From contig CDRNVI010000075.1 in NCBI GenBank assembly GCA_977017575.1, forward strand, positions 54,201 through 118,200: a stretch of DNA of 64,000 bases, written 5' to 3'. The translations under genes and the position numbers were made by a program. Within the stretch, counting starts at the first letter, position 1. Each line of letters opens with the position of its first letter. Shown piece by piece: positions 1 through 40,645 of the stretch. The notes under the pieces are model-generated. The model was given only the letters and a program-made list of their open reading frames with translations, was not told where the DNA came from and did no database searches. Origin of the DNA: Paramoeba atlantica (Eukaryota; Protista; Discosea).

Positions 1-1347
1 CCGCATTTTGTACAGCCCATGATGTGTGTCAAGATTGAATCGGAGTCAAGAAGAATTCTGCAGCCGGGGCATGTGATGTGTGATGGCAGATCTGGGTGAG
101 CGATCCCCAATCGGGGCATGACGGCGAGACTGAACAGGTGTGATGGTATGAGTCGCGCGTCAGAGTGCGTCCATCCATTATTGCCTTTGTGTGTTACTTT
201 TTCGAGTACCTTCGCTATGTTTGATTGCTCGTGGGTCATCTTTTTCCAAATTTTGATGTGCTTTTGAGCCGCCGTCGTGGTTTCGTCTACCGGAGGTATG
301 TTGCTCTGAAGGTGGTCCGCTGATCCAACATTTCGCTCCCTGATTCCATCTGTCCGAGCTGAATTGTTTATGGGGCGCTCAAGAACAGAGTGGCATGAGG
401 AGCGGTACGCGGCCTCTCGCGTGGAAGAGCAGTCTGTCAAGCCAAGTCCTCCTTTTTTTGTGGGCATTCGCAGCAACGCGATTTGTTCATCCGAGAGATG
501 TCCGAACCATGATGTAAGAACGTTTTCTACCTCTTTGTCGAATCGGGTCGCTAGTTCAGCTGAAGCGGTGGGGTTGTGTGCACGGAGGTGGTAGGCCTGT
601 CTAACGTTTATACATCTGGAAAGCAGATTGCACGATACATTGTTAACCCCCATCAATTTGAGCCGTCGGAAGCTGTCGTTGTGCTTCGTCAGTGACTGTA
701 TTAGGCGTTCGCTGACCGATTTGTCGTCCCCGATGAAAGCCCCAAGGATTTTTGTTGCTTTTTTTTTGGTGATTACCCCGGCGCTCTCTAATTCTTGTGG
801 TAATGGTTCTTCTTCCAGTCCGCCAAACCAGACACATTTTTTGGGAGCAACTATTAGATTTTGTTCCTCTAGAAGCGTTTTTAGTCGGGAGAAGGCACTG
901 GCCAATCGCTCGGGGTTTTTTGACGCAATAGTTACATCATCGACATAAGCGTTGATTGTGATATCAGGGTGCTCTGCAGACAGAGTTTCAAGGATTGGTT
1001 GCAATAGGGCACAGAAATAAACCGATGAAAGTGTGGACCCTTGTCGGACACCATTTGTGCTTGGAATTGTTCCTACATGGTGACCTTGATTTCCGTAGTA
1101 TAGCAACTCAGATGCCGTTGCGTATTCAGCATGGAAAAACCTCTGGAAGGGTTTCAATGTAGCAAGACCATATACGGCTTTCGCCAGGGCTGGTCGCGAT
1201 GGGGAGTTGAAGGCGTTTTTTACATCTACGGATAGGATGCACGAGCCGTCGCGATATAGGGAGTTTAGCCGATGTACAATCTTCTCGCAGCCTGACTTAG
1301 ATAGAACTCCTTGTTGGAGCGGCGCAAATAGCGGTTGCAGGGTGGGT
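1..1347 (-). pseudogene. CRE/SLACS-like non-LTR retrotransposon RT fragment (subfamily B), runs off the window start
   Basis: Hand translation gives an open frame missed by the ORF track: ...VDVKNAFNSPSR...GVRQGSTLSSVYFC...NAYVDDV...CVWFGG...GGLGL...CPGC..HIMGCTKC, collinear with ORF 43560-46568. Confidence 0.9.
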
Positions 1348-12348: not shown

Positions 12349-13883
12349 TCGCAATAAAAAGGTTAGAGAAGGAGTGTCACTATACCAAACTAAATAAATG
12401 AAATCTCTAAACAAAACAAACAAATCATATCTCATAATATAAATATTATGTGCCCCCAAGGGCCATTATATCAATCATCCTAAATTTCTAAACGTACACT
12501 TATATAAACAAAACAAACAAATCATATCTCATAATATAAATATTATGTGCCCCGAAGGGCCATTATATCAATCATCCTAAATTTCTAAACGTATACTTAT
12601 AGTTTACTCAGCTTTTCAATCAGTTTATGTTCCACAACTTTCGCACTTCCTATGTATCCACCTAACACTTTGATGGACTGTTCGCATGTTGTGACGCCAA
12701 GCTCCTTGAGGTTGGTGTTATTTAATACTTCGTTTGTGTTTCGGAACCACTCGCATTTTCCGTAGTTTATATGTAAATTCAAATCCTGGGTAAGTTCACG
12801 TAAATGATGAAAAGCTGCCTCCAGTGACTTTATATTCTTTGAGCTCATTGTAACGTCGTCTTGGTACGCTCGAATTTTTACTTCGGGATAATTTTTGGCT
12901 AGGGGGGACCTTCGATGAGTACTCATCGTAAGTTGTAGACTTTCGATGAGTCTCACGGAAAGTTGTAGACTTTCGATGAGTACTCATCGAAGGTGTTTTT
13001 GACTTTTTCAATTTTTCGTATTTTATCAATTTTTTGCGAAGGGCCAACTGTGAGCGTAGCCCTGGGACATAATAATATTTTTTGGCGACCCGTGCGCTCC
13101 ATGCGGAGGTGGTGGATATTGGCACGGCGGGCGGAGGAGGAGTTGGCATCACGGCCTTCTTTTTCCGGCGGGCACAAAAGTCCTTGACTTCCACCGTAAA
13201 TTTCCGTTCGTTGAGAACTCAACGAACGTACCCCCAACCCGTCTACCCCTTCCGCAGGATTGTCCAGAGGCAAGGCCCAACTGTGAGCGTAGCCCTGTTG
13301 TTTTTTGTAAGACGGATTCTTCAGCTATTTTGCCGGTTTTAACGTAGGTATCATGTTTCCGTTACGTTGATGGCCATCAGACTATGAGTAGATCATATGT
13401 TTTCTTTTTGTAAATTATGCAGTCTGATTTAGCTTCTATTATCGATTAGGAGTTCGGATTCTCTTTTGACCATGGGACATAATAATATCTTTTGGCGCCC
13501 CGCGCGCTCCAGCACGCGGGTAGCGCACTGGGAACCTGTGTCTACCCCTTCCGAAGGATTGTGAATTTGTTTTATACAAACGCTTCAGTTTGTTTGCCAC
13601 AAACGCTTCGGTGAGTAATAAAAAAACCTCGAAAATCTCTATTAGGGTCGCTCAAAAACGCTTCGATGAGTACTCATCGAAAGTTGTAGACTCTCGATGA
13701 GACTCACGGAAAGTTGTAGACTTTCGATGAGTACTCATCGAAGGTCCCCCCTACCCAAATAAACTTGCTCGATAATGATAGTTCTAAACATGCTTTCGGA
13801 TTTTTTGGATTTTGAATGACTATTGTATTTTGTTTTGAAATATTTTTTGACTGGCTTTTTCCACGGGGGCGGACTTCTCCGAG

Positions 13884-15089
13884 TCAACTTCTTAGGCCAG
13901 ACCCCCGCGCCTGAAAACCCCCTCTCGACACGCCTCTCCCAACTGGTACGCTAGGGTAAGTTCCCCGAGACACTCCACGGTAAAAACCGCCTCGATATCC
14001 ATCTCTGCTTCGCATTCGCCCTCGTGTTCCATATGAAATGCTTCGTCGTATGGTATTTCCGAGAGTGTCATCACTACGCTGATTTTCATAATGCGTTCGA
14101 ACGTATGAAGAATCCGCTCCACGATAAACGCCTTGGGTTATTCGAAGTTTATCTAACAGTTGTTGACCTATACTTACTTCATGGAGTTCTTCTTCAATTC
14201 CCCCACGACGGGCAGCCTCATGCATCCACTGCTTCAGAAGACCCCAGAGAAACGCGACCTCTTCTGTCATTACTGTTGGAAGCTCCAAATCGATTCGAAT
14301 CCTCTGTTCAAGCATGTCTATGCTGAGTGGGTCGCCAGAGCGTAAGTATACGTTCCATGTTCGGACGTTGTGGAATACAAACTTTGTTGAATCCTCTGTT
14401 CCGACAAGTTCTGGATCTTCGATCTTCCCCGGCATCACCGGAATCTTTGTTACTGTCTCAATCTTGATATACGAGACCCCGTCTTTTGGCAAAGGGTAAT
14501 CACCTTTCTCATACGTCACGACCAAAATCGGATTCCCTTGTTCATCACAACTTGCTCTGGGGGAGCCACGCCACGTTATTGATGTCTCAGGACCGTTTAG
14601 TGTTAAATACCAAGTGACCTCGATCTCAATTTCGTTCTCCTCCAGAAGTTCTGAGATAGCAATTATTTTTTCTTGAATCTCATCCTCGTTGAGAGCGCGG
14701 ATAGCCAGTGCATCTCGGCGATCTACCTGGTTTCTTGTGGACCGTTGAACCGAAGCCTGGGATGCAGCTTGTGAGGGAACTTGAGTTTGAGTCGGGGACA
14801 AAGATTGTGCTATGATAGTAGGCAAAATTTTCGTAAGCTCTTGGCGAATCATCAATCCAATGTTTTCTTGTGCTCTTTCCAATCTCGTCACCTGACTCGA
14901 TACTTCTTCCATCGTCAGCCGCATTTTGTTAAAGTCTGCTTCAATTTCAACAGCCTGTTCAGCATTTGCAACGAATTCCGGGATTGCACTATGTGTGGGT
15001 GCTGGACCCGGTGTATGAAAAACTTCATTAGTATTCGAACTTCGAACAATCTCTTCGTTCTCTTTTTCGGCCGTAGCTTTGCGGACCAT
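13884..15089 (-). CDS. 401-aa gag-like protein (YR family of 38605-39881), copy 1
   Basis: Complete ATG-to-stop ORF. W..VRTW, LWGLLKQWM and an RG-rich tail are shared with the gag at 38605-39881. The stop region GACTC..GTC.GCCCCCGTG matches the region just upstream of the YR ATG at 34610. Confidence 0.75.
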   Translation of the reverse strand: MVRKATAEKENEEIVRSSNTNEVFHTPGPAPTHSAIPEFVANAEQAVEIEADFNKMRLTMEEVSSQVTRLERAQENIGLMIRQELTKILPTIIAQSLSPTQTQVPSQAASQASVQRSTRNQVDRRDALAIRALNEDEIQEKIIAISELLEENEIEIEVTWYLTLNGPETSITWRGSPRASCDEQGNPILVVTYEKGDYPLPKDGVSYIKIETVTKIPVMPGKIEDPELVGTEDSTKFVFHNVRTWNVYLRSGDPLSIDMLEQRIRIDLELPTVMTEEVAFLWGLLKQWMHEAARRGGIEEELHEVSIGQQLLDKLRITQGVYRGADSSYVRTHYENQRSDDTLGNTIRRSISYGTRGRMRSRDGYRGGFYRGVSRGTYPSVPVGRGVSRGGFQARGSGLRS

Positions 15090-15179
15090 GAAAAAAAATC
15101 GTTTGAAAAGTTGTGTAAAGGAATGATCCTGAGAAATAAAAGTAAAAGCATAATGAAATGTTCAGTAGACGGAATCGAA

Positions 15180-15317
15180 ATTACTTTCTCAAGTTTACAG
15201 CATTATAATTCCTAGCACTGCCGATGCATAAACCAATCTGGCGCACAAGGACTCATATATGTGCAGAGGTGCATGCGATGCTATGCCTGGTGGAATTTTC
15301 CGAAGAAATCGGTCACA
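15180..15317 (-). pseudogene. Short YR-type RT/RH connection fragment (also +3761 and +7522)
   Basis: FLRKIP...YESLCARLVYASAVL matches FVNKIP...LESLCARLLYASGIL in 31903-34749. Confidence 0.7.
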
Positions 15318-15924
15318 GTGAAAAGTAGCCAAGCCCGCGCGATGTTCCCCGACTGTAGGGTCCTTGTCGACGTTTCTGCACGTTAATACTGTGGTGTATT
15401 CCATTTCCAATGACGTCTTCCGGATCGTTTTGAGCTTGATAAATCATTCGGAGGTAATTGGGGTCCGCACCACGATAAACTCCTTGTTGCATACGAAGGT
15501 CGTCGAGAGCACGTTGTCCAGTCCGGACTTGGGGCACGTTTTCCTGGTCGATTCCGCCTCTTCCTTTCATGTCGTTCATCCACTCTACAAGCACTTCCCA
15601 CATTGGACGCAAATTGTTTGGCAACGGTGAAGGCAGCGCTAGAGCAGTTTGTACGCGTATAATCAAGAAATCAACACCAAATTCGCTGTTTGTCATTAAA
15701 TATTTGTTCCAAGTCCGAACATCTCTAATCTTAAAGTCATCTTGATCATTTGGAGTTGATTCGGTGTTGTCAACAGCTTGCTCTAACCGATCAGGCATCG
15801 CTGGTTCACTTTGAACAATTTCAATACGTGTGTACTTGACTTTAGGATTCGGCAACTTGTAGTTTCCAGAAAGATAACTTACGGTAATACTTTTCCCTTC
15901 TTCCTCGCGAACAAAACTACCCAC
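15313..15924 (-). pseudogene. Truncated gag-like ORF (also 19074-19685 and 22835-23446)
   Basis: Identical to the first 202 aa of 51533-52261, then breaks; distant paralogue of the 401-aa gag (DVRTW, MWEVLVEWM). Confidence 0.75.
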
Positions 15925-16004
15925 CTAGAAGGAAAAAGAATAGAAAAATATTCTGTAAAAAAATAATATGCTATTTTGTAATTCGTCACTACGAAGGTAA
16001 TAAA

Positions 16005-16150
16005 GGCCAGGGGGGGCATTCGATGAAAATTCATCGAACGCACCGTGCGTTCGATGAATATTCATTGAACGGCGTCCCGTTCGATGACCAGGCGTCCCGT
16101 TCGATGAATATTCATCGAACGGGCAGTGCGTTCGATGAATCATTCATCCA
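16005..16150 (+). repeat. Variant left TIR of the Merlin-like family with TTCGATGA-N4-TCATCGAA palindromes
   Basis: GGCCAGGGGGGGCATTCGATGAAAATTCATCGAAC; present in each unit of both arrays. Confidence 0.7.
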
Positions 16151-16569
16151 ACGGGCACTGCTGCACGAATTTTTCGTCTCGATTTTTTTTGGGGGGAATT
16201 TGAACATTACCATCTCGTTTACATGTCTGGAGGCAAGGCCCAACTGTCAGCGAAGCCCAAGTGTGCAAGCAAGGCCCCCGTCTGCGAGCAAGGCCCAACT
16301 GTGAGCGTAGCCCGCTTCTGGAGGCAAAAGCCCCCCTTTGCGAGCAAGGCCCAACTGTGAGCGTAGCCCTGGGACATAATTATATTTTTTGGCGACCCGC
16401 GCGCTCCATGCGGAGGTGGTGTATATTAGCACGGCGGGCGGATGAGTTGGCATCACGGCCTTCTTTTTCCATCGGGCACGAGGGAGCGGCAAAATCTCAG
16501 GAGCTACTCCTGATTCTTTTGCTTTGGAGCGTGTGAACACTCCCATGAAAGGTAAAAAAAGTAAATAAT

Positions 16570-16605
16570 CAACAAGGTACAGAAACTGTATCTTTATCGT
16601 TAAAG
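16570..16605 (-). other. Spliced-leader-like 36-mer CTTTAACGATAAAGATACAGTTTCTGTACCTTGTTG
   Basis: Contains the ACAGTTTCTGTAC core and terminal TTG of kinetoplastid/diplonemid SL exons; followed by 23 nt and an ATG, no GT donor. Confidence 0.85.
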
Positions 16606-17644
16606 ATTATTGTACGTGTGCTTCTCTCTAGATTCGTGGGAAGCAATTTGCGAAGCCCAGCTACCTTGATAACAAATTTTAGTACCCATTTTGGCCGCGC
16701 GGGGGCCCCCGCGTGAGCGGGGGTGCGCGCGGCCGCGAAACGGCGAGGGCCCGCGTGAGCGGGCCTGAGCCGTACCCCGCGTAGGATTCCCCTGTGCGTC
16801 GTTAGTGGGAAGCAATTTGCGAAGCTCACTGAATTTCGTAGTTTTCGCTACGGAGGCGTTGTCAACGTATGTAGTGAAGTGTAGGATACTGAACGCACGG
16901 AAAAGGAAAATCAAAAAAAAATCTTGGGTGTTCCACAAAAGTCCTTGACTTCCACCGTAAATTTCCGTTCGTTGAGAACTCAACGAACGTACCCCCAACC
17001 CGTCTACCCCTTCCGCAGGATTGTCCAGAGGCAAGGCCCAACTGTGAGCGTAGCCCTGTTGTTTTTTGTAAGACGGATTCTTCAGCTATTTTGCCGGTTT
17101 TAACGTAGGTATCATGTTTCCGTTACGTTGATGGCCATCAGACTATGAGTAGATCATATGTTTTCTTTTTGTAAATTATGCAGTCTGATTTAGCTTCTAT
17201 TATCGATTAGGAGTTCGGATTCTCTTTTGACCATGGGACATAATAATATCTTTTGGCGCCCCGCGCGCTCCAGCACGCGGGTAGCGCACTGGGAACCTGT
17301 GTCTACCCCTTCCGAAGGATTGTGAATTTGTTTTATACAAACGCTTCAGTTTGTTTGCCACAAACGCTTCGGTGAGTAATAAAAAAACCTCGAAAATCTC
17401 TATTAGGGTCGCTCAAAAACGCTTCGATGAGTACTCATCGAAAGTTGTAGACTCTCGATGAGACTCACGGAAAGTTGTAGACTTTCGATGAGTACTCATC
17501 GAAGGTCCCCCCTACCCAAATAAACTTGCTCGATAATGATAGTTCTAAACATGCTTTCGGATTTTTTGGATTTTGAATGACTATTGTATTTTGTTTTGAA
17601 ATATTTTTTGACTGGCTTTTTCCACGGGGGCGGACTTCTCCGAG

Positions 17645-18850
17645 TCAACTTCTTAGGCCAGACCCCCGCGCCTGAAAACCCCCTCTCGACACGCCTCTCC
17701 CAACTGGTACGCTAGGGTAAGTTCCCCGAGACACTCCACGGTAAAAACCGCCTCGATATCCATCTCTGCTTCGCATTCGCCCTCGTGTTCCATATGAAAT
17801 GCTTCGTCGTATGGTATTTCCGAGAGTGTCATCACTACGCTGATTTTCATAATGCGTTCGAACGTATGAAGAATCCGCTCCACGATAAACGCCTTGGGTT
17901 ATTCGAAGTTTATCTAACAGTTGTTGACCTATACTTACTTCATGGAGTTCTTCTTCAATTCCCCCACGACGGGCAGCCTCATGCATCCACTGCTTCAGAA
18001 GACCCCAGAGAAACGCGACCTCTTCTGTCATTACTGTTGGAAGCTCCAAATCGATTCGAATCCTGTGTTCAAGCATGTCTATGCTGAGTGGGTCGCCAGA
18101 GCGTAAGTATACGTTCCATGTTCGGACGTTGTGGAATACAAACTTTGTTGAATCCTCTGTTCCGACAAGTTCTGGATCTTCGATCTTCCCCGGCATCACC
18201 GGAATCTTTGTTACTGTCTCAATCTTGATATACGAGACCCCGTCTTTTGGCAAAGGGTAATCACCTTTCTCATACGTCACGACCAAAATCGGATTCCCTT
18301 GTTCATCACAACTTGCTCTGGGGGAGCCACGCCACGTTATTGATGTCTCAGGACCGTTTAGTGTTAAATACCAAGTGACCTCGATCTCAATTTTGTTCTC
18401 CTCCAGAAGTTCTGAGATAGCAATTATTTTTTCTTGAATCTCATCCTCGTTGAGAGCGCGGATAGCCAGTGCATCTCGGCGATCTACCTGGTTTCTTGTG
18501 GACCGTTGAACCGAAGCCTGGGATGCAGCTTGTGAGGGAACTTGAGTTTGAGTCGGGGACAAAGATTGTGCTATGATAGTAGGCAAAATTTTCGTAAGCT
18601 CTTGGCGAATCATCAATCCAATGTTTTCTTGTGCTCTTTCCAATCTCGTCACCTGACTCGATACTTCTTCCATCGTCAGCCGCATTTTGTTAAAGTCTGC
18701 TTCAATTTCAACAGCCTGTTCAGCATTTGCAACGAATTCCGGGATTGCACTATGTGTGGGTGCTGGACCCGGTGTATGAAAAACTTCATTAGTATTCGAA
18801 CTTCGAACAATCTCTTCGTTCTCTTTTTCGGCCGTAGCTTTGCGGACCAT
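17645..18850 (-). CDS. 401-aa gag-like protein, copy 2
   Basis: Tandem copy of 13884-15089. Confidence 0.75.
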   Translation of the reverse strand: MVRKATAEKENEEIVRSSNTNEVFHTPGPAPTHSAIPEFVANAEQAVEIEADFNKMRLTMEEVSSQVTRLERAQENIGLMIRQELTKILPTIIAQSLSPTQTQVPSQAASQASVQRSTRNQVDRRDALAIRALNEDEIQEKIIAISELLEENKIEIEVTWYLTLNGPETSITWRGSPRASCDEQGNPILVVTYEKGDYPLPKDGVSYIKIETVTKIPVMPGKIEDPELVGTEDSTKFVFHNVRTWNVYLRSGDPLSIDMLEHRIRIDLELPTVMTEEVAFLWGLLKQWMHEAARRGGIEEELHEVSIGQQLLDKLRITQGVYRGADSSYVRTHYENQRSDDTLGNTIRRSISYGTRGRMRSRDGYRGGFYRGVSRGTYPSVPVGRGVSRGGFQARGSGLRS

Positions 18851-20330
18851 GAAAAAAAATCGTTTGAAAAGTTGTGTAAAGGAATGATCCTGAGAAATAA
18901 AAGTAAAAGCATAATGAAATGTTCAGTAGACGGAATCGAAATTACTTTCTCAAGTTTACAGCATTATAATTCCTAGCACTGCCGATGCATAAACCAATCT
19001 GGCGCACAAGGACTCATATATGTGCAGAGGTGCATGCGATGCTATGCCTGGTGGAATTTTCCGAAGAAATCGGTCACAGTGAAAAGTAGCCAAGCCCGCG
19101 CGATGTTCCCCGACTGTAGGGTCCTTGTCGACGTTTCTGCACGTTAATACTGTGGTGTATTCCATTTCCAATGACGTCTTCCGGATCGTTTTGAGCTTGA
19201 TAAATCATTCGGAGGTAATTGGGGTCCGCACCACGATAAACTCCTTGTTGCATACGAAGGTCGTCGAGAGCACGTTGTCCAGTCCGGACTTGGGGCACGT
19301 TTTCCTGGTCGATTCCGCCTCTTCCTTTCATGTCGTTCATCCACTCTACAAGCACTTCCCACATTGGACGCAAATTGTTTGGCAACGGTGAAGGCAGCGC
19401 TAGAGCAGTTTGTACGCGTATAATCAAGAAATCAACACCAAATTCGCTGTTTGTCATTAAATATTTGTTCCAAGTCCGAACATCTCTAATCTTAAAGTCA
19501 TCTTGATCATTTGGAGTTGATTCGGTGTTGTCAACAGCTTGCTCTAACCGATCAGGCATCGCTGGTTCACTTTGAACAATTTCAATACGTGTGTACTTGA
19601 CTTTAGGATTCGGCAACTTGTAGTTTCCAGAAAGATAACTTACGGTAATACTTTTCCCTTCTTCCTCGCGAACAAAACTACCCACCTAGAAGGAAAAAGA
19701 ATAGAAAAATATTCTGTAAAAAAATAATATGCTATTTTGTAATTCGTCACTACGAAGGTAATAAAGGCCAGGGGGGGCATTCGATGAAAATTCATCGAAC
19801 GCACCGTGCGTTCGATGAATATTCATTGAACGGCGTCCCGTTCGATGACCAGGCGTCCCGTTCGATGAATATTCATCGAACGGGCAGTGCGTTCGATGAA
19901 TCATTCATCCAACGGGCACTGCTGCACGAATTTTTCGTCTCGATTTTTTTTGGGGGGAATTTGAACATTACCATCTCGTTTACATGTCTGGAGGCAAGGC
20001 CCAACTGTCAGCGAAGCCCAAGTGTGCAAGCAAGGCCCCCGTCTGCGAGCAAGGCCCAACTGTGAGCGTAGCCCGCTTCTGGAGGCAAAAGCCCCCCTTT
20101 GCGAGCAAGGCCCAACTGTGAGCGTAGCCCTGGGACATAATTATATTTTTTGGCGACCCGCGCGCTCCATGCGGAGGTGGTGTATATTAGCACGGCGGGC
20201 GGATGAGTTGGCATCACGGCCTTCTTTTTCCATCGGGCACGAGGGAGCGGCAAAATCTCAGGAGCTACTCCTGATTCTTTTGCTTTGGAGCGTGTGAACA
20301 CTCCCATGAAAGGTAAAAAAAGTAAATAAT

Positions 20331-20366
20331 CAACAAGGTACAGAAACTGTATCTTTATCGTTAAAG
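20331..20366 (-). other. SL-like 36-mer (array copy)
   Basis: Same context as 16570-16605. Confidence 0.85.
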
Positions 20367-21405
20367 ATTATTGTACGTGTGCTTCTCTCTAGATTCGTGG
20401 GAAGCAATTTGCGAAGCCCAGCTACCTTGATAACAAATTTTAGTACCCATTTTGGCCGCGCGGGGGCCCCCGCGTGAGCGGGGGTGCGCGCGGCCGCGAA
20501 ACGGCGAGGGCCCGCGTGAGCGGGCCTGAGCCGTACCCCGCGTAGGATTCCCCTGTGCGTCGTTAGTGGGAAGCAATTTGCGAAGCTCACTGAATTTCGT
20601 AGTTTTCGCTACGGAGGCGTTGTCAACGTATGTAGTGAAGTGTAGGATACTGAACGCACGGAAAAGGAAAATCAAAAAAAAATCTTGGGTGTTCCACAAA
20701 AGTCCTTGACTTCCACCGTAAATTTCCGTTCGTTGAGAACTCAACGAACGTACCCCCAACCCGTCTACCCCTTCCGCAGGATTGTCCAGAGGCAAGGCCC
20801 AACTGTGAGCGTAGCCCTGTTGTTTTTTGTAAGACGGATTCTTCAGCTATTTTGCCGGTTTTAACGTAGGTATCATGTTTCCGTTACGTTGATGGCCATC
20901 AGACTATGAGTAGATCATATGTTTTCTTTTTGTAAATTATGCAGTCTGATTTAGCTTCTATTATCGATTAGGAGTTCGGATTCTCTTTTGACCATGGGAC
21001 ATAATAATATCTTTTGGCGCCCCGCGCGCTCCAGCACGCGGGTAGCGCACTGGGAACCTGTGTCTACCCCTTCCGAAGGATTGTGAATTTGTTTTATACA
21101 AACGCTTCAGTTTGTTTGCCACAAACGCTTCGGTGAGTAATAAAAAAACCTCGAAAATCTCTATTAGGGTCGCTCAAAAACGCTTCGATGAGTACTCATC
21201 GAAAGTTGTAGACTCTCGATGAGACTCACGGAAAGTTGTAGACTTTCGATGAGTACTCATCGAAGGTCCCCCCTACCCAAATAAACTTGCTCGATAATGA
21301 TAGTTCTAAACATGCTTTCGGATTTTTTGGATTTTGAATGACTATTGTATTTTGTTTTGAAATATTTTTTGACTGGCTTTTTCCACGGGGGCGGACTTCT
21401 CCGAG

Positions 21406-22611
21406 TCAACTTCTTAGGCCAGACCCCCGCGCCTGAAAACCCCCTCTCGACACGCCTCTCCCAACTGGTACGCTAGGGTAAGTTCCCCGAGACACTCCAC
21501 GGTAAAAACCGCCTCGATATCCATCTCTGCTTCGCATTCGCCCTCGTGTTCCATATGAAATGCTTCGTCGTATGGTATTTCCGAGAGTGTCATCACTACG
21601 CTGATTTTCATAATGCGTTCGAACGTATGAAGAATCCGCTCCACGATAAACGCCTTGGGTTATTCGAAGTTTATCTAACAGTTGTTGACCTATACTTACT
21701 TCATGGAGTTCTTCTTCAATTCCCCCACGACGGGCAGCCTCATGCATCCACTGCTTCAGAAGACCCCAGAGAAACGCGACCTCTTCTGTCATTACTGTTG
21801 GAAGCTCCAAATCGATTCGAATCCTGTGTTCAAGCATGTCTATGCTGAGTGGGTCGCCAGAGCGTAAGTATACGTTCCATGTTCGGACGTTGTGGAATAC
21901 AAACTTTGTTGAATCCTCTGTTCCGACAAGTTCTGGATCTTCGATCTTCCCCGGCATCACCGGAATCTTTGTTACTGTCTCAATCTTGATATACGAGACC
22001 CCGTCTTTTGGCAAAGGGTAATCACCTTTCTCATACGTCACGACCAAAATCGGATTCCCTTGTTCATCACAACTTGCTCTGGGGGAGCCACGCCACGTTA
22101 TTGATGTCTCAGGACCGTTTAGTGTTAAATACCAAGTGACCTCGATCTCAATTTCGTTCTCCTCCAGAAGTTCTGAGATAGCAATTATTTTTTCTTGAAT
22201 CTCATCCTCGTTGAGAGCGCGGATAGCCAGTGCATCTCGGCGATCTACCTGGTTTCTTGTGGACCGTTGAACCGAAGCCTGGGATGCAGCTTGTGAGGGA
22301 ACTTGAGTTTGAGTCGGGGACAAAGATTGTGCTATGATAGTAGGCAAAATTTTCGTAAGCTCTTGGCGAATCATCAATCCAATGTTTTCTTGTGCTCTTT
22401 CCAATCTCGTCACCTGACTCGATACTTCTTCCATCGTCAGCCGCATTTTGTTAAAGTCTGCTTCAATTTCAACAGCCTGTTCAGCATTTGCAACGAATTC
22501 CGGGATTGCACTATGTGTGGGTGCTGGACCCGGTGTATGAAAAACTTCATTAGTATTCGAACTTCGAACAATCTCTTCGTTCTCTTTTTCGGCCGTAGCT
22601 TTGCGGACCAT
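21406..22611 (-). CDS. 401-aa gag-like protein, copy 3
   Basis: Tandem copy of 13884-15089. Confidence 0.75.
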   Translation of the reverse strand: MVRKATAEKENEEIVRSSNTNEVFHTPGPAPTHSAIPEFVANAEQAVEIEADFNKMRLTMEEVSSQVTRLERAQENIGLMIRQELTKILPTIIAQSLSPTQTQVPSQAASQASVQRSTRNQVDRRDALAIRALNEDEIQEKIIAISELLEENEIEIEVTWYLTLNGPETSITWRGSPRASCDEQGNPILVVTYEKGDYPLPKDGVSYIKIETVTKIPVMPGKIEDPELVGTEDSTKFVFHNVRTWNVYLRSGDPLSIDMLEHRIRIDLELPTVMTEEVAFLWGLLKQWMHEAARRGGIEEELHEVSIGQQLLDKLRITQGVYRGADSSYVRTHYENQRSDDTLGNTIRRSISYGTRGRMRSRDGYRGGFYRGVSRGTYPSVPVGRGVSRGGFQARGSGLRS

Positions 22612-24091
22612 GAAAAAAAATCGTTTGAAAAGTTGTGTAAAGGAATGATCCTGAGAAATAAAAGTAAAAGCATAATGAAATGTTCAGTAGACGGAATCGA
22701 AATTACTTTCTCAAGTTTACAGCATTATAATTCCTAGCACTGCCGATGCATAAACCAATCTGGCGCACAAGGACTCATATATGTGCAGAGGTGCATGCGA
22801 TGCTATGCCTGGTGGAATTTTCCGAAGAAATCGGTCACAGTGAAAAGTAGCCAAGCCCGCGCGATGTTCCCCGACTGTAGGGTCCTTGTCGACGTTTCTG
22901 CACGTTAATACTGTGGTGTATTCCATTTCCAATGACGTCTTCCGGATCGTTTTGAGCTTGATAAATCATTCGGAGGTAATTGGGGTCCGCACCACGATAA
23001 ACTCCTTGTTGCATACGAAGGTCGTCGAGAGCACGTTGTCCAGTCCGGACTTGGGGCACGTTTTCCTGGTCGATTCCGCCTCTTCCTTTCATGTCGTTCA
23101 TCCACTCTACAAGCACTTCCCACATTGGACGCAAATTGTTTGGCAACGGTGAAGGCAGCGCTAGAGCAGTTTGTACGCGTATAATCAAGAAATCAACACC
23201 AAATTCGCTGTTTGTCATTAAATATTTGTTCCAAGTCCGAACATCTCTAATCTTAAAGTCATCTTGATCATTTGGAGTTGATTCGGTGTTGTCAACAGCT
23301 TGCTCTAACCGATCAGGCATCGCTGGTTCACTTTGAACAATTTCAATACGTGTGTACTTGACTTTAGGATTCGGCAACTTGTAGTTTCCAGAAAGATAAC
23401 TTACGGTAATACTTTTCCCTTCTTCCTCGCGAACAAAACTACCCACCTAGAAGGAAAAAGAATAGAAAAATATTCTGTAAAAAAATAATATGCTATTTTG
23501 TAATTCGTCACTACGAAGGTAATAAAGGCCAGGGGGGGCATTCGATGAAAATTCATCGAACGCACCGTGCGTTCGATGAATATTCATTGAACGGCGTCCC
23601 GTTCGATGACCAGGCGTCCCGTTCGATGAATATTCATCGAACGGGCAGTGCGTTCGATGAATCATTCATCCAACGGGCACTGCTGCACGAATTTTTCGTC
23701 TCGATTTTTTTTGGGGGGAATTTGAACATTACCATCTCGTTTACATGTCTGGAGGCAAGGCCCAACTGTCAGCGAAGCCCAAGTGTGCAAGCAAGGCCCC
23801 CGTCTGCGAGCAAGGCCCAACTGTGAGCGTAGCCCGCTTCTGGAGGCAAAAGCCCCCCTTTGCGAGCAAGGCCCAACTGTGAGCGTAGCCCTGGGACATA
23901 ATTATATTTTTTGGCGACCCGCGCGCTCCATGCGGAGGTGGTGTATATTAGCACGGCGGGCGGATGAGTTGGCATCACGGCCTTCTTTTTCCATCGGGCA
24001 CGAGGGAGCGGCAAAATCTCAGGAGCTACTCCTGATTCTTTTGCTTTGGAGCGTGTGAACACTCCCATGAAAGGTAAAAAAAGTAAATAAT

Positions 24092-24127
24092 CAACAAGGT
24101 ACAGAAACTGTATCTTTATCGTTAAAG
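24092..24127 (-). other. SL-like 36-mer (array copy)
   Basis: Same context as 16570-16605. Confidence 0.85.
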
Positions 24128-25978
24128 ATTATTGTACGTGTGCTTCTCTCTAGATTCGTGGGAAGCAATTTGCGAAGCCCAGCTACCTTGATAACAAATT
24201 TTAGTACCCATTTTGGCCGCGCGGGGGCCCCCGCGTGAGCGGGGGTGCGCGCGGCCGCGAAACGGCGAGGGCCCGCGTGAGCGGGCCTGAGCCGTACCCC
24301 GCGTAGGATTCCCCTGTGCGTCGTTAGTGGGAAGCAATTTGCGAAGCTCACTGAATTTCGTAGTTTTCGCTACGGAGGCGTTGTCAACGTATGTAGTGAA
24401 GTGTAGGATACTGAACGCACGGAAAAGGAAAATCAAAAAAAAATCTTGGGTGTTCCACAAAAGTCCTTGACTTCCACCGTAAATTTCCGTTCGTTGAGAA
24501 CTCAACGAACGTACCCCCAACCCGTCTACCCCTTCCGCAGGATTGTCCAGAGGCAAGGCCCAACTGTGAGCGTAGCCCTGTTGTTTTTTGTAAGACGGAT
24601 TCTTCAGCTATTTTGCCGGTTTTAACGTAGGTATCATGTTTCCGTTACGTTGATGGCCATCAGACTATGAGTAGATCATATGTTTTCTTTTTGTAAATTA
24701 TGCAGTCTGATTTAGCTTCTATTATCGATTAGGAGTTCGGATTCTCTTTTGACCATGGGACATAATAATATCTTTTGGCGCCCCGCGCGCTCCAGCACGC
24801 GGGTAGCGCACTGGGAACCTGTGTCTACCCCTTCCGAAGGATTGTGAATTTGTTTTATACAAACGCTTCAGTTTGTTTGCCACAAACGCTTCGGTGAGTA
24901 ATAAAAAAACCTCGAAAATCTCTATTAGGGTCGCTCAAAAACGCTTCGATGAGTACTCATCGAAAGTTGTAGACTCTCGATGAGACTCACGGAAAGTTGT
25001 AGACTTTCGATGAGTACTCATCGAAGGTCCCCCCTACCCTAATTTTTGGAGACCTCCTTCAACGGTTGTTGCAGGAGAGAGCAAAAATAGAGCGATGAAA
25101 GTGCTGATCCCTGTCTTACTCCTGAAGAACTTTCTATAATCGAGTGTAATGCATTATTGGCGAAGAAAAGGAGTTCGGAAGGCTGGCCGTATTCTAGATA
25201 GAAAAGCCGCATGAAGTGTTTAAAGATCGGCTCCTTAAGCAGTGATTTCGCTATTTCCGTACGATGTGGCGTATTATAAGCATTCTTGAAATCAACTGTG
25301 AGTATAGTGTATCCGTTTTTTCGTTCCTCTAACAACTCATGCACTATTGACTCACAGGCTCTTTCTTGTAGAATACCCCGTTGGATTGGCTTGAAAAGGG
25401 TTTTGAGGGAGCTTTCGTGTCTGTTTAAGAGAATCGAACCGCATATTTTTAGAATTGTGTCGCCCATTGCAACTGGTCGTATGCCGTTTTGCGGCTTTGC
25501 TAGAGCAATTATTCTGCAGCGTGTAAGTCGTTTACGTACGCTTTCTGCTACATCACCATTGATGACGTCACGAAACATGTGGCAAAGCGCTAGGCAGGAT
25601 TCCTCATCTTCCACTAAAAGTCGCATCATGCTTTCGCTGAAGCCTGTTGGTCCCGGCGCTGCTCCTCGAGATAGCTTTTCTGTTGCCACCCGAAGCTCTG
25701 ATTGCTCAACTACCCCAATCCGTGGAAAATCTTCTTCTAAACGTTTGGGGGTGGGTCCTGTAGGATGGAGCTCTTTCAACTTGAAAACTTTCTCATGCGG
25801 TTCTAGAGATGACTCTCGGTATACATTGTCCAAAATCCGTGTTGCTTTACTCAAATTTCCTGCTTTTGCTGCTGTCAGTGCGTTTCTTATTGACCGCTGA
25901 TCGATTGCAAGTTCTTGACGTTGTTCTTCACTCAGATTTTGGTCGTCTAAGAGCTCGCGGTGTCTACGGCGATGGGAT

Positions 25979-26772: not shown

Positions 26773-27564
26773 TTTTTTTTTTGGTTCCGTCATAGTCAGA
26801 TGACGAAGTAAAAAACAATGTATTTTGCTCGTTCTAATACTTCCCGGAGATCACATAACCGTATATATGCATTTGGGGATTTAATCCTTTTGTTTATACC
26901 TATTCATTTCAAAAGTGGTCTTAAGCATAATTTTATCTTTGCAGAAATTTATCGCAGCATAATTTTATCTTTTCAGAATTTTTATCGCAGTAGAATTTCA
27001 TCGCAACGAAATTTATCTCAGCAAAACTAGAAAAAGTTAGCATAAATAATGATCGCAGGCACCGCAGACCTGAATATCAAGAACACCATATGCAGTGTTG
27101 TATTTTGATTTTTGAGGTGACATGCATCACGCAAGAGACGTGCACTCCTCAGCAGGAAGAAGGAAACTTCCTGTCTCTTCAGTTTGCCGGAGCGTAAATG
27201 GGTTATCCGTGCTCATCAACAAACCTCCGAGAAGTCTCACTTTCCTCTGCTTCAGAGTACACAATCTCATCACTTACCCATTGAAAGCATTCCGCAACAC
27301 TCTCCATCTTTCCAGTTTGCCGGAGCGTAAGTGGGTTTTCCGTGCTCATCAACAAACCTTCAAAATGAAGAGTGTCTCGTCCTGCTTTCAACGAGCACAT
27401 GATCTTTTTGCATGCGCATGCCACACTCAGTGCCTTTTTCACCTTTCCAGTGTCGTTTGCTTCGGAGCGCGGGCGAAAGCGAGGGTCCTCCGACGATGTG
27501 ACATTTGAAAGGATCATAAAAGGAATAAAAATCAACAAGGTACAGAAACTTCTTCTACAGAAAC
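26773..27564 (-). pseudogene. Processed retrocopy of a trans-spliced mRNA (SL relic, 104-aa ORF 27517-27203, poly(A), 9-bp TSD)
   Basis: SL 3' 18 nt at 27533-27550; A10 at 26773-26782; TSD GAAGAAGAA at 27565-27573 and 26764-26772. Removal restores QDEEESAENN. Product unknown. Confidence 0.85.
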
Positions 27565-28068
27565 TTCTTCTTCGTCTTGATCTTCATTCTTCTCGTCCAG
27601 GAAATTCCCAATCGCCTTTATCTTATTCAGCTTAACAGCACTAAGCGACCATATTTTAATTCTATCTGACGGCGGTAAGTGTAGGATACCTTGTGGACCC
27701 TCTCCTTTCCCCTCCTTATAAGAAATCTGAATCTTTACCATTCCTTTCCGTGAGGATCTTTTTACGACTTCGCCAACGGAGTGATACATCTCTTTATTCC
27801 TGCTAAATCGCACCTCGCAAGTCGTACCTTTGCCCCATTCTCTAATAATTTGTTGGACTTGGTCAGGGGCTTTTGCGAAACATGGGTTGCTCTTGTTTTC
27901 TTCACCGTCTGTCGACATAGAATCTGATTGTGTCGCTTTTTCGTCTTCGGACTTTGAGGCGTTCGATTCATCATTTTCCGAAGTTTCTATATCGATATTT
28001 CCTCGTTCAATTTTTTTAATCTTGAGTACGGGGACTCGTCTGATCTGCTCTTCTTTGCCAATAACTCG

Positions 28069-34749: not shown

Positions 34750-34919
34750 CCGACTAGCGAAACATTCTTTTTTTTAGTCGATCAATGATTTAGTCTTTTT
34801 TTTACGACTTTAACGTCTTGTTGTAGTATACAATGGCAGTATACAATGTTGCTGTATACTCAAAATAATAGTTTCACGTGTTTTCCGTTCCTTTATTTAT
34901 TCACATGTTACTCAAAAAA

Positions 34920-35200
34920 GCAAAACAGTAATAGCCGAATGCTGAAAGTAGCGAAAAAGTGACGACTCAAAGCAGCGAAACGGTGATAACCCAAAGCAGC
35001 GAAACAGTAACAACCAAGAGCTGAAAGCTGCGGAACAATAATCACCAAGCAGCAAAACAAAAATAACCAAAGGCTGAAACCTAACCAAGCAGCGAAACAG
35101 TAATCACCAAAGGCTGAAAGCAACGAAACATTATTAATCACCAAAGGCTGAAAGCAACGAAACATTATTAACGAAATGTTAAAAGCAGCGAAAATGTAAT
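34920..35200. repeat. Degenerate minisatellite in the CRE 3' UTR (AAAGCAGCGAAACAGTAA..CC-like units)
   Basis: About ten imperfect units read directly. Confidence 0.7.
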
Positions 35201-35214
35201 ATTCAGAGGAGTGT

Positions 35215-38200
35215 TTAAAGACGGAGTCCTCCTACCCATTTCTCGGTTTCTATATATTGGCGCAATTGAGAGACGACTGCATAGGCTGAATATTTTTCCA
35301 GTTCAAGTTGAAAAGCTTCTCGTACAATCTTGTAATCAACATCACTTCTTTTCGCCAATGTTTTCAGCAAAACCTTTCTCTTCATGTAGTACTCCACAAT
35401 CTGTCACAGCTATGCAGCGAAAGCATTCTGGATCAAGACCTTTTTCTTTGACATATTTTGCTATCTTCCGCTCTTCCGCACTCTGCAGCAGGGCATTGCT
35501 GCTCTGCTTTGCATAGCTGCTGCAGCACGTATGTACCACGGTAACGTCGTATAAAATTTCTCCAACATCTGGCCACATAATCGCTAGGTCTGGGCCAGAT
35601 CTAATTCGACGCGCTCGGCAAGGATGGTATTCCGCCGCTTCTGGGGAAATTGAGCACTTGCATTTGGTGCAAAAAAAGGACGCATGAATACGAGGTTCGA
35701 TCGCACATGGAAGACCAGCTTTGGAACACATTTCGGCAATATAGCGTACCAAATGAGAATGTTTTCTCGTGCAATTCATGCCAGCACATCGTGAACATCC
35801 CGCTACGTGTGGAATGATTTTGCTTGATGTTTCGATTGTTCCACATCCAGGGCATGTAATCTCGCCTGACACATTACTTAGAGCAATTCCTAGGCGCATC
35901 ATTAGAGTGTAACGAAAAAGATATGGATTTACGTAGTTGCACGTTGAATCTAAGTGATTGTTCGCCTCCTTCGTTCGCTTTATGATATTTTGGAATCTCG
36001 GTATTGCATTCAATTCTGCTGCTGTCTTCTCGTGTTCATTCTTCATGCTCTTTCTTAGCTGGGTGCGTGCAGCTTGTGAATTCGTTCGTGTGCTGTCGGC
36101 TTGTTTCTTGCCTCCCTTATCTACCGGAGCATTAATGGGTTTCGATCGCTCATCAATAGATTTTAGGGACGCTTCGAAAAAGTAGCGTTGCTTTAGAACG
36201 GTTGAGGTGATTCCTAGACCTCCCATTTTACATGGGAGGGCAGAGAGTTTAAGTGCTTCACTATCTGCACCACACCATTTCTTTAAGATCTCATGGATTT
36301 CCTCGTCGAACACCTGGGCAAGAAGAAACGAAGCTCCAGGTTTGTGGACTCGAAGGTGGTAATCATGACGGGGTATGGTACATCGCTTGAGAATCGCTAG
36401 TGACAAGTTGCTGGGACCCATAGCGCGAAGTCTTCGAAATAAACATTTATGTTTCCCTAACTTCTCCAAGAGCTTTCGTTCAACGGCTTTATTATGCCCG
36501 ATGTATGCTCCTAGGACCTTGATGGAATCCACACAGTCTTCCACCCCAAGTTCCTTGAGATCCATCCCTCGATTATTCGTTGAACTGTTGCCTTGGAATA
36601 CTTCGCATTTACGGGAATTAATTTCAAGATTCAGACCACTTGCTAGTTCTTTGAGGTGAAGGAACGCAACTTCCAAAGACGACTCATTTTTGGAGCTCAT
36701 CGTCACATCGTCCTGGTAGGCTCTGATAGTAACCTCTGGATAGAGCTTCGCAATTTCTTTCAAAGGACCTTGTAGCAGTGCGCAAAAATAAACCGAAGAG
36801 AGTGCTGATCCTTGACGGACCCCAGACGAGCTTTCGATCACGGAATGTAATGAGTCGTTGGCGAAAAATAAAAGTTCCGATGGTTGACCATATTCAAAAT
36901 AGAACATTCGCATAAAGTGTTTGAATACCGGGTATTGAAGGAGCGCTTCTTCTATTGCCGTACGTTGTGGCGTATTGTATGCATTCTTGAAGTCAATCGT
37001 CAAAATTGTGGCTCCAGCTTCATGCTCTTCCAAAAGTTCATGTACAATGGACTCACATGCATTCTTTTGTAATATGCCTCTTTGGATCGGTTGGAATATG
37101 TCTGACAAGGAGTTCGCATGGCGCTCAAGGAGGATACAACCGCAAATTTTTAGCAGCGTTTCCCCCATTGCAACCGGTCGTATTCCATTGTTCGGTTTTG
37201 CAAGGGCTATCATTCTGCATCGTGTTAATCTTACTCGGACACTTTTCGCAACTTCCCCATTTATGACGTCTCTCAGCATGTGGCAGAGTGAAAGGCAGGA
37301 TTCTTCGTCCTCCACTAAAATTCGCATCATGCTTTCACTCAGACCTGTCGGGCCAGGAGCTGCACCTTTTGACAATTTTTCAGTCGCTAGACGAAGTTCA
37401 GAAGGTTCCAATATCGCAATTCGCGGGAAGTCTCGATCAGAAGTTTGAGGTGTAGGGCCTTTGGGGTGTAGATCTCGAAGTTTGTCAACCTTTTCCCAGA
37501 GTGGAAGAGCAGAGTCCTTGTAAACATTGTCGAGTATGCGGGTAGCTTTTCCAAGATTTCCTGCCTTTGCTGCTTGCAATGCATTTCGAATTGATCGTTT
37601 GTCTACTTCTTGTACAAGTCGTTCTTCCTCGGTAATGTTCGTATCGATAGTTTCCCACTCACGTCTCCCTCGACGCTGTACGGAGCTCTGGCGCCGTAGG
37701 TAGTTTAGACGGATTGTGGCCAAAGAGTCCCGTGGTGTATCGAGGAGTTTGTGCCAGATAACAGTTCTTTCTGCTTCTGTCTGAGCCTTCGGGTACGCTT
37801 TAATAATGGAACGAAAAATCGCGATTACATGGACGGCAAACGTTGGATCAATTTGTGCCATCTTTGGCAGCGGTTCCAAATCAGATGTTCCGTCAATGCC
37901 TCGCTCCTCCTTGTTCTCTGAATTTCCAGTGTTTTCCATTGACACATCGACGCTTTTTACTTTATTTAGACACAGTGCCTTAATGGACCAAATTTTCACT
38001 TTTGCAGATGGAGGAAGGTAGATAAAACCAGAGGGTCCATTGTCTCCGTCGCTTGGCTTGTATTCCACCTTCAGCTTTACAATACCTTTTCGGACAGTCC
38101 TCTTCACCACTACTCCTTTTGAGGCATATTTCTGCTCTTTTTTGAATCCCCATCTCAGTTCGCACGTCGTTCCTTTGCCCCATTCATGGATAATGGTGTT

Positions 38201-38604
38201 GATGTGATCTGGAGCCTTCGGAAATTCTTCGTTTTTGCGTTGCCCCACTTCCCCATCCATCGACGTCACTTCCTCATCCACCGACATCACATCAGATTCT
38301 TCGCCTGTGGTATCATCGGAGGCGCCTTCGCAATCTTCAGGATGTTTGGATGAATCTCTCTCCTCATCGGAATCATTCTCGGACTCTTGTGAGGTCGGCC
38401 TTGCATCAGAAAATTTTATCCTTGGCCGTCGGTAGTCGCTATGTACCTCGTGGTCGGCCCAGTTCGGCGATAATTCCTTTGCACTCATAATAACTCTCAC
38501 ACGGGGGGTTTTCTTTGGCTTATCGAGCGTTGATCCCCTCTTCATAATTTGTTCGGCGTTTTGCGTGTTCATACGAGTAAAAATAAAACAACAAGGTACA
38601 GAAA
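35215..38604 (-). mobile_element. Near full-length CRE-like element (subfamily A) starting with an SL fragment
   Basis: 1076-aa ORF 38572-35342 with AYQDD, CPGC..HVAGCSRC, GPDLAI, YDVTVVH; a single frameshift near 35380 separates the last ~55 codons. Confidence 0.92.
38589..38604 (-). other. SL 3' fragment TTTCTGTACCTTGTTG, 16 nt upstream of the CRE ATG
   Basis: Exact match to the last 16 nt of the 36-mer. Confidence 0.75.
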
Positions 38605-40445: not shown

Positions 40446-40609
40446 ATGTAGTCATCTTTTTCACCGATGCCAAGCCGGAGGGGTATAACCGAAGAAAGCA
40501 GCGATCAATCCATGCTCCTAAGCTACCTCCTGCACCTACGCTACCTCGGATGGGGCGCCAGCCCCCTTGTGACATTGAGATGTAAAACTTAGTAGAAATA
40601 CAACAAGGA

Positions 40610-40645
40610 CAACAAGGTACAGAAACTGTATCTTTATCGTTAAAG
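40610..40645 (-). other. SL-like 36-mer, independent context
   Basis: Identical 36-mer with flanks unrelated to the array copies; followed by a CCTTGTTG stutter, a short UTR and an ATG. Confidence 0.85.

What the first reader, a model, noticed from the sequence alone, without database searches (positions are those of the whole stretch)
16570..16605. Genomic spliced-leader relics: trans-spliced RNAs reverse-transcribed back into the genome
Seen: CTTTAACGATAAAGATACAGTTTCTGTACCTTGTTG, or its 3' part, occurs eight times in four independent contexts (16570 and four array copies; 27533; 38589; 40610). Identity always stops after TTG and is followed by an unrelated short UTR and an ATG, never by GT. 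Established: euglenozoan SL exons carry CAGTTTCTGTAC and end in TTG; SL genes continue with a GT intron; SL-tagged retrocopies are well known in dinoflagellates. Inference: active mRNA recycling in a euglenozoan with a divergent SL, involving both TE and unknown transcripts.
Basis: partly seen in the sequence, partly recalled or inferred. Interest (0 to 1): 0.85.

Follow-up and report, generated by a model that had tools for sequence, protein, structure and literature searches.

The report
Spliced-leader fossils heading retroelement copies
The host's spliced-leader mini-exon, normally added to mRNAs only at the RNA level, is written into this kinetoplastid-type genome at the 5' ends of several retrotransposon and retrocopy families, which shows they were copied back from trans-spliced RNA.

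Summary

- **Where it occurs.** The 36-mer, or its 3' part, occurs 8 times on the minus strand; none is expected by chance. These fall into four independent contexts, A to D.
- **What follows it.** Identity always stops at the exon end (TTG). A 15-35 nt pyrimidine-rich UTR with almost no AG follows, then an ATG. GT never follows.
- **It is the real leader.** A metagenome contig (L004) and DNA contigs of the window's own organism carry the same exon joined to a GTATGAGAAGC intron. That intron has a terminal hairpin and a T run, and the gene is linked to 5S rRNA.
- **Context B** is a processed insertion with a poly(A) tail and a 9-nt target-site duplication (TSD) inside an open reading frame (ORF). 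A sister copy (L010) has an 8-nt TSD, and its empty site lies in this window.
- **Context C** heads an R2/CRE-type LINE (reverse transcriptase (RT) plus a restriction-like endonuclease motif).
- **Other contigs.** Nearly identical copies there carry leaders of different length (16 versus 32 nt), and a 5'-truncated copy has none. The leader is therefore acquired per insertion.
- **Caveats.**
  - The five context-A copies are one capture amplified as DNA, and there the leader lies inside the repeated unit.
  - No progenitor copy without the leader was found.
  - RNA evidence is thin.
  - Everything tagged is a repeat family, not a shown host gene.

First-stage notes of this scan report the same pattern on other DNA of this genome.

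The parts
16570..16605 (-). Context A, copy 1: complete SL exon relic. The match may extend to 16608 if the leader starts AAT. It is followed by a 23-nt UTR and an ATG at 16546 (99-aa ORF 16247-16546).
20331..20366 (-). Context A, copy 2 (array 1)
24092..24127 (-). Context A, copy 3 (array 1)
52907..52942 (-). Context A, copy 4 (array 2)
56275..56310 (-). Context A, copy 5 (array 2)
13173..25043 (-). Tandem array 1, period 3761, 3.2 units. Each unit holds the leader, a 99-aa ORF, a 203-aa gag-like fragment, a 401-aa gag-like ORF and a GC-rich block flanked by 21-nt direct repeats.
49704..57449 (-). Tandem array 2, period 3368. It shares 1670 nt at 100% identity with array 1 (15318-16987 = 55023-56692), with the leader inside the shared part.
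26773..27563 (-). Context B: processed retro-insertion. Parts: an 8-nt leader fragment (27556-27563), a repeated target heptamer (27549-27555), a 16-nt leader relic (27533-27548), a 15-nt UTR, a 104-aa ORF (27203-27517), a 3' UTR and an A10 tail (26773-26782).
27565..27573 (-). Upstream copy of the 9-nt TSD GAAGAAGAA of insertion B. The downstream copy is at 26764-26772. Removing the insert restores the reading frame of a CRE-like N-terminal ORF.
34797..38604 (-). Context C: full-length R2/CRE-type non-LTR retrotransposon. Parts: a 16-nt leader relic (38589-38604), a 16-nt UTR, a 1076-aa ORF (35342-38572), a repeat-rich 3' UTR and an A8 tail ending at 34797. It is nested in a gag-bearing element.
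40601..40645 (-). Context D: 36-nt leader relic (40610-40645) followed by a 9-nt partial repeat of the leader's 3' end (40601-40609). A 25-nt UTR follows, then an ATG at 40575 (169-aa repeat-containing ORF) and a gag-like ORF from about 39880.
224..231 (-). Empty target site. The same TE sequence in L010 carries a B-family insertion here, flanked by an 8-nt TSD.

Best explanation
These are DNA fossils of the organism's spliced leader. Shown: the organism has a canonical kinetoplastid-type SL RNA gene, and its exon is this sequence. Inferred: retroelement RNAs are transcribed as parts of longer precursors and receive the leader by trans-splicing at a fixed point 15-40 nt upstream of their first ATG. 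The capped mRNA is then used as the template for reverse transcription. For the R2/CRE-type LINEs and the short B family this is probably target-primed. For the gag-bearing (probably tyrosine-recombinase) elements it probably goes through a circular or multimeric cDNA. The new DNA copy therefore begins with whatever part of the leader the RT reached: either nearly all of it (32-39 nt) or only the last 13-17 nt. It ends with a short poly(A), and TSDs were seen where both flanks could be read. Context A is one such capture, later multiplied as DNA in two tandem arrays. Partial tandem repeats of the leader's 3' end between a longer relic and the UTR suggest repeated rounds or RT slippage.
For: SL gene: L004 carries the exon followed by a GT intron whose first 12 nt equal those of T. 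brucei, then a hairpin (-33.6 kcal/mol, z -5.4), a T run and 5S rRNA (98 bits). The same exon-intron junction appears in contigs of three DNA runs that hold 38-89% of the window's sampled words, at depths of 432, 1545 and 56. These are comparable with the 5S rRNA contigs of the same runs (runs).
RNA: a 579-nt contig at depth 1448 in the probable RNA run has the leader at its end.
Sharp exon boundary: in 127 kb held (window plus seven loci), about 17 independent relics were found. None is followed by GT, and all have an ATG within 15-49 nt.
Insertion hallmarks: B has an A10 tail and a 9-nt TSD, and the host frame is restored. The L010 copy has an 8-nt TSD, with its empty site at window 224-231. 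A 5'-truncated B copy with a poly(A) tail and a 6-nt TSD lies inside a C-type element.
Per-insertion acquisition: C-type copies that are 99% identical carry a 16-nt relic, a 32-nt relic plus a partial repeat, or no leader when 5'-truncated. The three B copies have three different 5' junctions but the same leader/UTR join. LINE paralogs only 57-59% identical in protein all have a perfect relic at the same relative place, while their UTRs have diverged.
Against: No progenitor copy without the leader and with an AG acceptor at the UTR start was found. Every copy of every UTR in the held sequence is already leader-headed, so how such copies are spliced again at the same point is open. RNA evidence is two Logan contigs from one small run whose kind is only guessed. 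Trans-splicing onto ordinary genes was not observed. In context A the leader is internal to the repeated unit and no poly(A) precedes it, so its origin is inferred by analogy. The clustering of short relics at exactly 16 nt (at least six independent cases) is not predicted by simple random 5' truncation.
Confidence: 0.85

Rival explanations
1. SLACS/CZAR/CRE-style site-specific insertion. The elements cut SL exons in SL genes or in older relics, and the leader pieces are split target halves rather than part of the inserted DNA.
For: The context C element has the RT plus CCHC plus PD..D..K architecture of the SL-gene-specific clade. Short relics break at one preferred point, next to a palindrome. 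Other first-stage notes claim YR elements inserted inside SL exons elsewhere in this genome.
Against: There is no orphan 5' half of the leader in the window or the loci and no SL intron in the window. Empty-site and TSD data place the relic inside the inserted DNA for B and for the L010 copy. The flanks are other TEs, not SL genes.
Confidence: 0.03
2. The leader is now a fixed, inherited part of each element's consensus. It was captured once per family, perhaps kept for translation or stability, and is copied as ordinary element sequence rather than re-acquired by trans-splicing at each cycle.
For: All full-length copies seen are leader-headed and no version without the leader exists in the held sequence. 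The five context-A copies are plainly DNA duplicates. The acceptor AG is missing in leader-headed copies.
Against: Relic length and junction structure differ between 99%-identical copies: 16 versus 32 nt in the C family, and three different junctions in the B family. Relics are 100% identical to the SL while adjacent UTRs diverge between subfamilies. Inheritance from a read-through transcript would carry flank sequence upstream of the relic, which the empty-site case excludes.
Confidence: 0.08
3. RT template switching. At the 5' end of an uncapped element RNA, the RT jumps onto another SL-bearing RNA and makes chimeras, so the element's own RNA was never trans-spliced.
For: Messy 5' junctions with repeated leader fragments and repeated target bases look like template jumps. 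An earlier follow-up on another piece of this genome reported a LINE chimera.
Against: A jump onto SL RNA would copy intron sequence, and a jump onto another mRNA would copy its UTR. Instead the leader ends exactly at the exon end and joins the same UTR nucleotide in independent copies of a family.
Confidence: 0.03
4. Assembly artefact or cDNA contamination.
For: None specific.
Against: The same locus is present in a second assembly. The window's sampled words are held by three to four DNA runs. TSDs and an empty site are present.
Confidence: 0.01

Closest known systems
Relict spliced leaders of dinoflagellate retrogenes (DinoSL-tagged retrocopies; PMC5585692, PMC6050394, PMC12014239)
   Same: The SL exon is encoded in DNA at the 5' end of retroposed copies. 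The relics are 5'-truncated. Tandem partial relics are read as repeated rounds of retroposition and re-splicing.
   Different: This is a kinetoplastid-type euglenozoan. The tagged units seen are retrotransposons and a short multi-copy retroposon, not shown host genes. Only the 16-nt relic starts after an internal AG; the 10-nt and 8-nt partial repeats do not.
SLACS / CZAR / CRE1-2 site-specific non-LTR retrotransposons of trypanosomatid SL RNA genes (from my own knowledge; SLACS is named in PMC10161547)
   Same: A LINE with RT and a C-terminal CCHC plus restriction-like endonuclease motif, in a kinetoplastid-type host and associated with SL sequence.
   Different: Those elements interrupt the SL exon of SL genes, near nt 11/12 as I recall it, and are flanked by both halves. 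Here the exon's 3' part ends at the splice point and is joined to the element's own UTR, and the copies lie in other TEs.
SL RNA gene fragments littering the Perkinsela sp. genome (PMC5601477, Supplementary Note 1.3)
   Same: A kinetoplastid genome with hundreds of dispersed SL-derived pieces, some next to retrotransposons, attributed to reverse transcription.
   Different: The Perkinsela pieces include SL intron sequence: stand-alone introns, or the mini-exon plus the first 20 nt of the intron. They derive from SL RNA or its gene. Here no intron sequence is present, and the exon is fused to a UTR and an ORF.
Pr77-headed L1Tc/ingi/NARTc/RIME elements of trypanosomatids (PMC1874656, PMC8190864)
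   Same: Another answer to the same problem: how a retroelement gets a translatable 5' end in a genome without gene promoters.
   Different: Pr77 is an internal promoter that gives unspliced transcripts. Here the 5' end is the host leader itself.

Membership tests
SL-tagged retrocopy (reverse-transcribed trans-spliced RNA) | The genomic sequence is identical to the organism's SL exon and ends exactly at the exon's 3' end | tested here: met
SL-tagged retrocopy (reverse-transcribed trans-spliced RNA) | The organism has a separate bona fide SL RNA gene (exon, GT intron, terminal hairpin) | tested here: met
   One search shows the exon-intron junction in three DNA runs of the same organism; L004 is described
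SL-tagged retrocopy (reverse-transcribed trans-spliced RNA) | mRNA 5' ends carry this leader | tested here: inconclusive
   one abundant contig with the leader at its end, in a run only guessed to be RNA. No ordinary gene was examined.
SL-tagged retrocopy (reverse-transcribed trans-spliced RNA) | Insertion hallmarks: poly(A), target-site duplication, empty site | tested here: met
   B. L010 against window 224-231. Nested 5'-truncated B copy. C has an A8 tail but no clear TSD. Not shown for A or D.
SL-tagged retrocopy (reverse-transcribed trans-spliced RNA) | A progenitor locus with a splice acceptor where the leader now sits | tested here: not met
   none in 127 kb. This is a small sample, so absence from the genome is not shown.
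SL RNA gene | The exon is followed by a GT intron with an Sm site and hairpin | tested here: not met
SLACS/CZAR/CRE site-specific insertion in an SL gene | The element is flanked by the two halves of an interrupted SL exon inside an SL gene array | tested here: not met
SLACS/CZAR/CRE clade (sequence membership of the context C ORF) | RT plus C-terminal CCHC and a PD-(D/E)xK restriction-like endonuclease; phylogenetic placement within the clade | tested here: inconclusive
   Pfam RVT_1. The best solved-structure match is an R2 protein at E = 1e-8. The CCHC and PD..D motifs were read by eye. No tree with CRE or SLACS sequences was made.

The most novel reading that the evidence does not exclude
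Leader-headed copies may be self-renewing. Because no copy lacks the leader, the relic itself may supply the next trans-splice acceptor. Candidates are its internal CAG (which would leave the 16-nt relic), its CTG (which would leave the 10-nt partial repeat) or even its terminal TTG (same junction, fresh leader). That would imply non-AG acceptors, as reported for Perkinsela. If so, whole retroelement families live on a loop of trans-splicing and reverse transcription, and the tandem partial leaders count the rounds. A leader-bearing 5' end could also be the evolutionary route by which CRE/SLACS-type elements came to home to SL genes.
Probability: 0.25. Interest if true: 0.8.

Novelty: new variant of a known kind. 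Interest (0 to 1): 0.66.

Why it matters
In kinetoplastid-type genomes, genes have no promoters of their own and every mRNA is capped by trans-splicing. How mobile elements obtain a translatable, copyable RNA there is known only for two special cases: Pr77 internal promoters, and SLACS-type hijacking of SL genes. These fossils point to a third and more general route. Several unrelated retroelement families appear to propagate from ordinary trans-spliced mRNAs. The leader then works as a built-in tag. It marks full-length retro-insertions, dates them, records where RT stopped, and perhaps counts rounds of recycling, as DinoSL relics do in dinoflagellates. I found no report of this in Euglenozoa in the searched literature. 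The nearest report is of Perkinsela's intron-containing SL fragments.

Tried and rejected
- **Rfam.** The gathering scan of the window found nothing. A permissive scan around context A gave only sub-threshold noise, so the GC-rich block upstream of the context-A leader is not a known ribozyme.
- **Literature.** The leader's 3' 16-mer is in no held paper. The acoel genome paper turned out to be irrelevant.
- **Metagenome hits L003 and L005.** These are chance matches inside a coding sequence, not SL genes.
- **Split-target hypothesis for the 16-nt relics.** No orphan 5' halves were found, and the empty-site data contradict it.
- **Hairpin stall as the cause of the 16-nt breakpoint.** The exon's predicted hairpin is weak (-6 kcal/mol, z -1.6), so this is unsupported.
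- **Progenitor search.** No copy without the leader was found.
- **Not done.**
  - The organism was not identified, because run and organism names are coded.
  - The bacterial/archaeal genome collection was not scanned, since it cannot hold this eukaryote.

Full report
**Observation**

The 36-mer lies on the minus strand, exact at 16570, 20331, 24092, 40610, 52907 and 56275. Its 3' 16-19 nt lie at 27533 and 38589. Shuffled sequence gives no matches. Read on the minus strand, every copy stops matching at TTG. A pyrimidine-rich stretch of 15-35 nt follows, then an ATG. The next two bases are AT, TT or TC, never GT. The SL intron start is absent from the window.

A self-comparison shows that the five 'array' copies belong to two tandem arrays: 13173-25043 (period 3761) and 49704-57449 (period 3368). 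The arrays share a 1670-nt segment at 100% identity, and the leader lies inside that segment.

**Is it really the spliced leader?**

All published kinetoplastid and diplonemid leaders listed in PMC3795323 share the CAGTTTCTGTAC core and end in ATTG. This one differs mainly in its last 8 nt, and it is in no held paper.

A metagenome scan for the leader's 3' end plus GT returned L004. On its minus strand, a 38-nt exon starting AAC contains the 36-mer. The exon is followed by GTATGAGAAGCT, the same 12 bases that open the T. brucei SL intron. A very stable terminal hairpin (-33.6 kcal/mol, z -5.4) and a T run follow, and a 5S rRNA gene sits in the same 1.8-kb unit (98 bits).

Contigs of runs of the window's own organism were laid on L004. 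Three of these runs (X1, X3, X4) hold 38-89% of the window's sampled words.
- In each of the three DNA runs, one contig joins the last 26 nt of the exon to 18 nt of identical intron. Thirteen differing nt follow, then the same hairpin.
- The depths of these contigs (432, 1545, 56) are comparable with those of the 5S contigs in the same runs.
- The organism therefore has a multi-copy canonical SL RNA gene. This corrects earlier first-stage notes that saw 'no SL RNA gene'.
- Many other contigs carry the exon and then run into T-rich sequence that is not intron.
- In the probable RNA run, a 579-nt contig at depth 1448 has the leader at its end. This is thin support, but it is consistent with use on RNA.

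**Are the copies retro-insertions?**

*Context B*:
- A 16-nt leader relic, a 15-nt UTR, a 104-aa ORF, a 3' UTR and an A10 tail, flanked by a 9-nt duplication (GAAGAAGAA).
- Removing the insert rejoins the two halves of an ORF in frame. That ORF resembles the N-terminal region of the context C protein.

*Other B-family copies.* The B ORF has three more copies at 96-99% identity on other contigs of the same ENA assembly.
- The L010 copy sits in a TE whose uninterrupted version is in this window. The alignments overlap by 8 nt at window 224-231. This is an empty site with a TSD, and the inserted DNA begins exactly at the 16-nt relic.
- In L011, a further 5'-truncated B copy with a poly(A) tail and a 6-nt TSD lies inside a C-type element.

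*Context C*:
- It heads a 3.8-kb element whose 1076-aa ORF has Pfam RVT_1.
- Its best solved-structure match is an R2 protein.
- It has a C-terminal CCHC and a PD..D restriction-like endonuclease motif.
- Its 3' end (an A8 tail at 34797) is fixed by two 99%-identical copies.

**Acquired once, or at each insertion?**

Paralogs of the context C ORF were fetched from other contigs.
- Elements only 57-59% identical in protein all carry a perfect relic at the same relative place. The relic is 16, 16-17 or 36-38 nt long, while their UTRs have diverged.
- Within the C family itself (99% identity), the window copy has 16 nt, the L011 copy has 32 nt plus a partial repeat, and the L012 copy is 5'-truncated with no leader.
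- The three B copies have three different 5' junctions but the same leader/UTR join.
- In 127 kb held, I count about 17 independent relics, including seven or eight in 23.5 kb of L009, on both strands.

This pattern fits leaders that come from the RNA template at each event. It does not fit a sequence inherited as DNA. The 99% identity of copies and the intact TSDs point to recent activity.

**Context A needs a separate reading**

At least 382 nt upstream of the leader are conserved in both arrays and in a dispersed copy in L009. No poly(A) precedes the leader. The leader is therefore internal to the repeated unit.

A related element in L009 has a first ORF starting MGMFTRS, against MGVFTRS here. 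It carries a 33-nt relic with a different upstream flank, so this family's leader/UTR join is also a splice product.

The head-to-tail arrays, with the leader at the unit junction, fit a gag-bearing element that passes through a circular or multimeric cDNA. They equally fit a retrocopy that was later amplified together with its surroundings. I could not decide between these.

**Unexplained features**

1. **Two classes of relic start.** Relics begin either within the first 8 nt of the leader (seven cases) or 13-17 nt from its 3' end (nine cases). At least six independent cases are exactly 16 nt, right after the leader's internal CAG. None begins in between. Random 5' truncation does not predict this. 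A split-target origin is excluded for B and L010. The predicted exon hairpin is weak.
2. **Partial tandem repeats.** Five junctions have partial repeats of the leader's 3' end (8-16 nt) between a longer relic and the UTR. They resemble the stacked relics of dinoflagellates, but only the 16-nt form starts after an AG.
3. **No copy without the leader.** No such full-length copy was found, and the UTRs are almost free of AG. How leader-headed copies are re-expressed is therefore open.
4. **An extra T.** Four independent near-complete relics read T before CTTTAACG, where L004 (and apparently the RNA contig) read AA-C. This is either a strain difference or an RT signature at cap-proximal modified bases.

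**Comparison with what is known**

- Retrogenes tagged with the spliced leader are well known in dinoflagellates (PMC5585692, PMC6050394).
- In kinetoplastids, the known links between retroelements and the SL are insertion into SL genes (SLACS, CZAR, CRE) and the intron-containing SL RNA fragments of Perkinsela (PMC5601477).
- Neither of those matches what is seen here.
- I found no report of exon-only leaders fused to retroelement UTRs in Euglenozoa. The library does not cover subscription journals.

**Verdict**

- The tagged RNAs seen are all from repeat families.
- Context A is one event amplified as DNA.
- Progenitors are unknown.
- RNA evidence is minimal.

First-stage notes of this scan report the same pattern on several other pieces of this genome.

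Noticed in passing
L004:1-1785: JGI metagenome contig Ga0316204_10168667 is a circularly permuted SL RNA-5S rRNA repeat unit from the same or a closely related organism. Its SL intron differs from the window organism's in a 13-14-nt stretch, and in both versions that stretch can still form a short hairpin (GAAC/GTTC versus CGAAC/GTTCG).
   Followed up: partly
window 16640-16830 (minus strand): A GC-rich, highly self-complementary block of about 150 nt, flanked by 21-nt direct repeats (GCTTCGCAAATTGCTTCCCAC), lies just upstream of the context-A leader. The L009 copy has one more repeat. No Rfam family matches it.
   Followed up: partly
window 25039-28074 (minus strand): Insertion B interrupts the N-terminal region of a second R2/CRE-type element, whose RT ORF is at 25039-26016. 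This N-terminal domain (motif EWGKGTTCE...) is shared with the context C ORF and has no Pfam match.
   Followed up: no
L011:5000-9400: Nested retro-insertions: a B copy is interrupted by a C-type LINE carrying a 32-nt leader relic. That LINE is in turn interrupted by a 5'-truncated B copy, polyadenylated at an alternative upstream site with a 6-nt TSD.
   Followed up: yes
L006:2458-7842: Two identical R2/CRE-type elements, each headed by the 16-nt relic, lie head to tail 5369 nt apart on a contig whose name marks it as circular (ctg3698c). This may be a tandem array or an extrachromosomal or collapsed repeat.
   Followed up: no
window 40162-40445 (minus strand): The 169-aa ORF behind the context-D leader is built of about three 108-nt tandem repeats (87% identity). 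It has no family match.
   Followed up: no
window, all eight relics: All eight leader relics (four independent contexts) are on the minus strand. The plus-strand retroelements in the window (41434-46568, 58483-61781) have none. With four events this is not significant (p about 0.125), but it may reflect the direction of transcription.
   Followed up: no
L009:2400-2450: A 34-nt leader relic heading an RT-encoding element starts 5 nt after the A16 tail of the preceding LINE. This suggests retroelements pile up head to tail.
   Followed up: no
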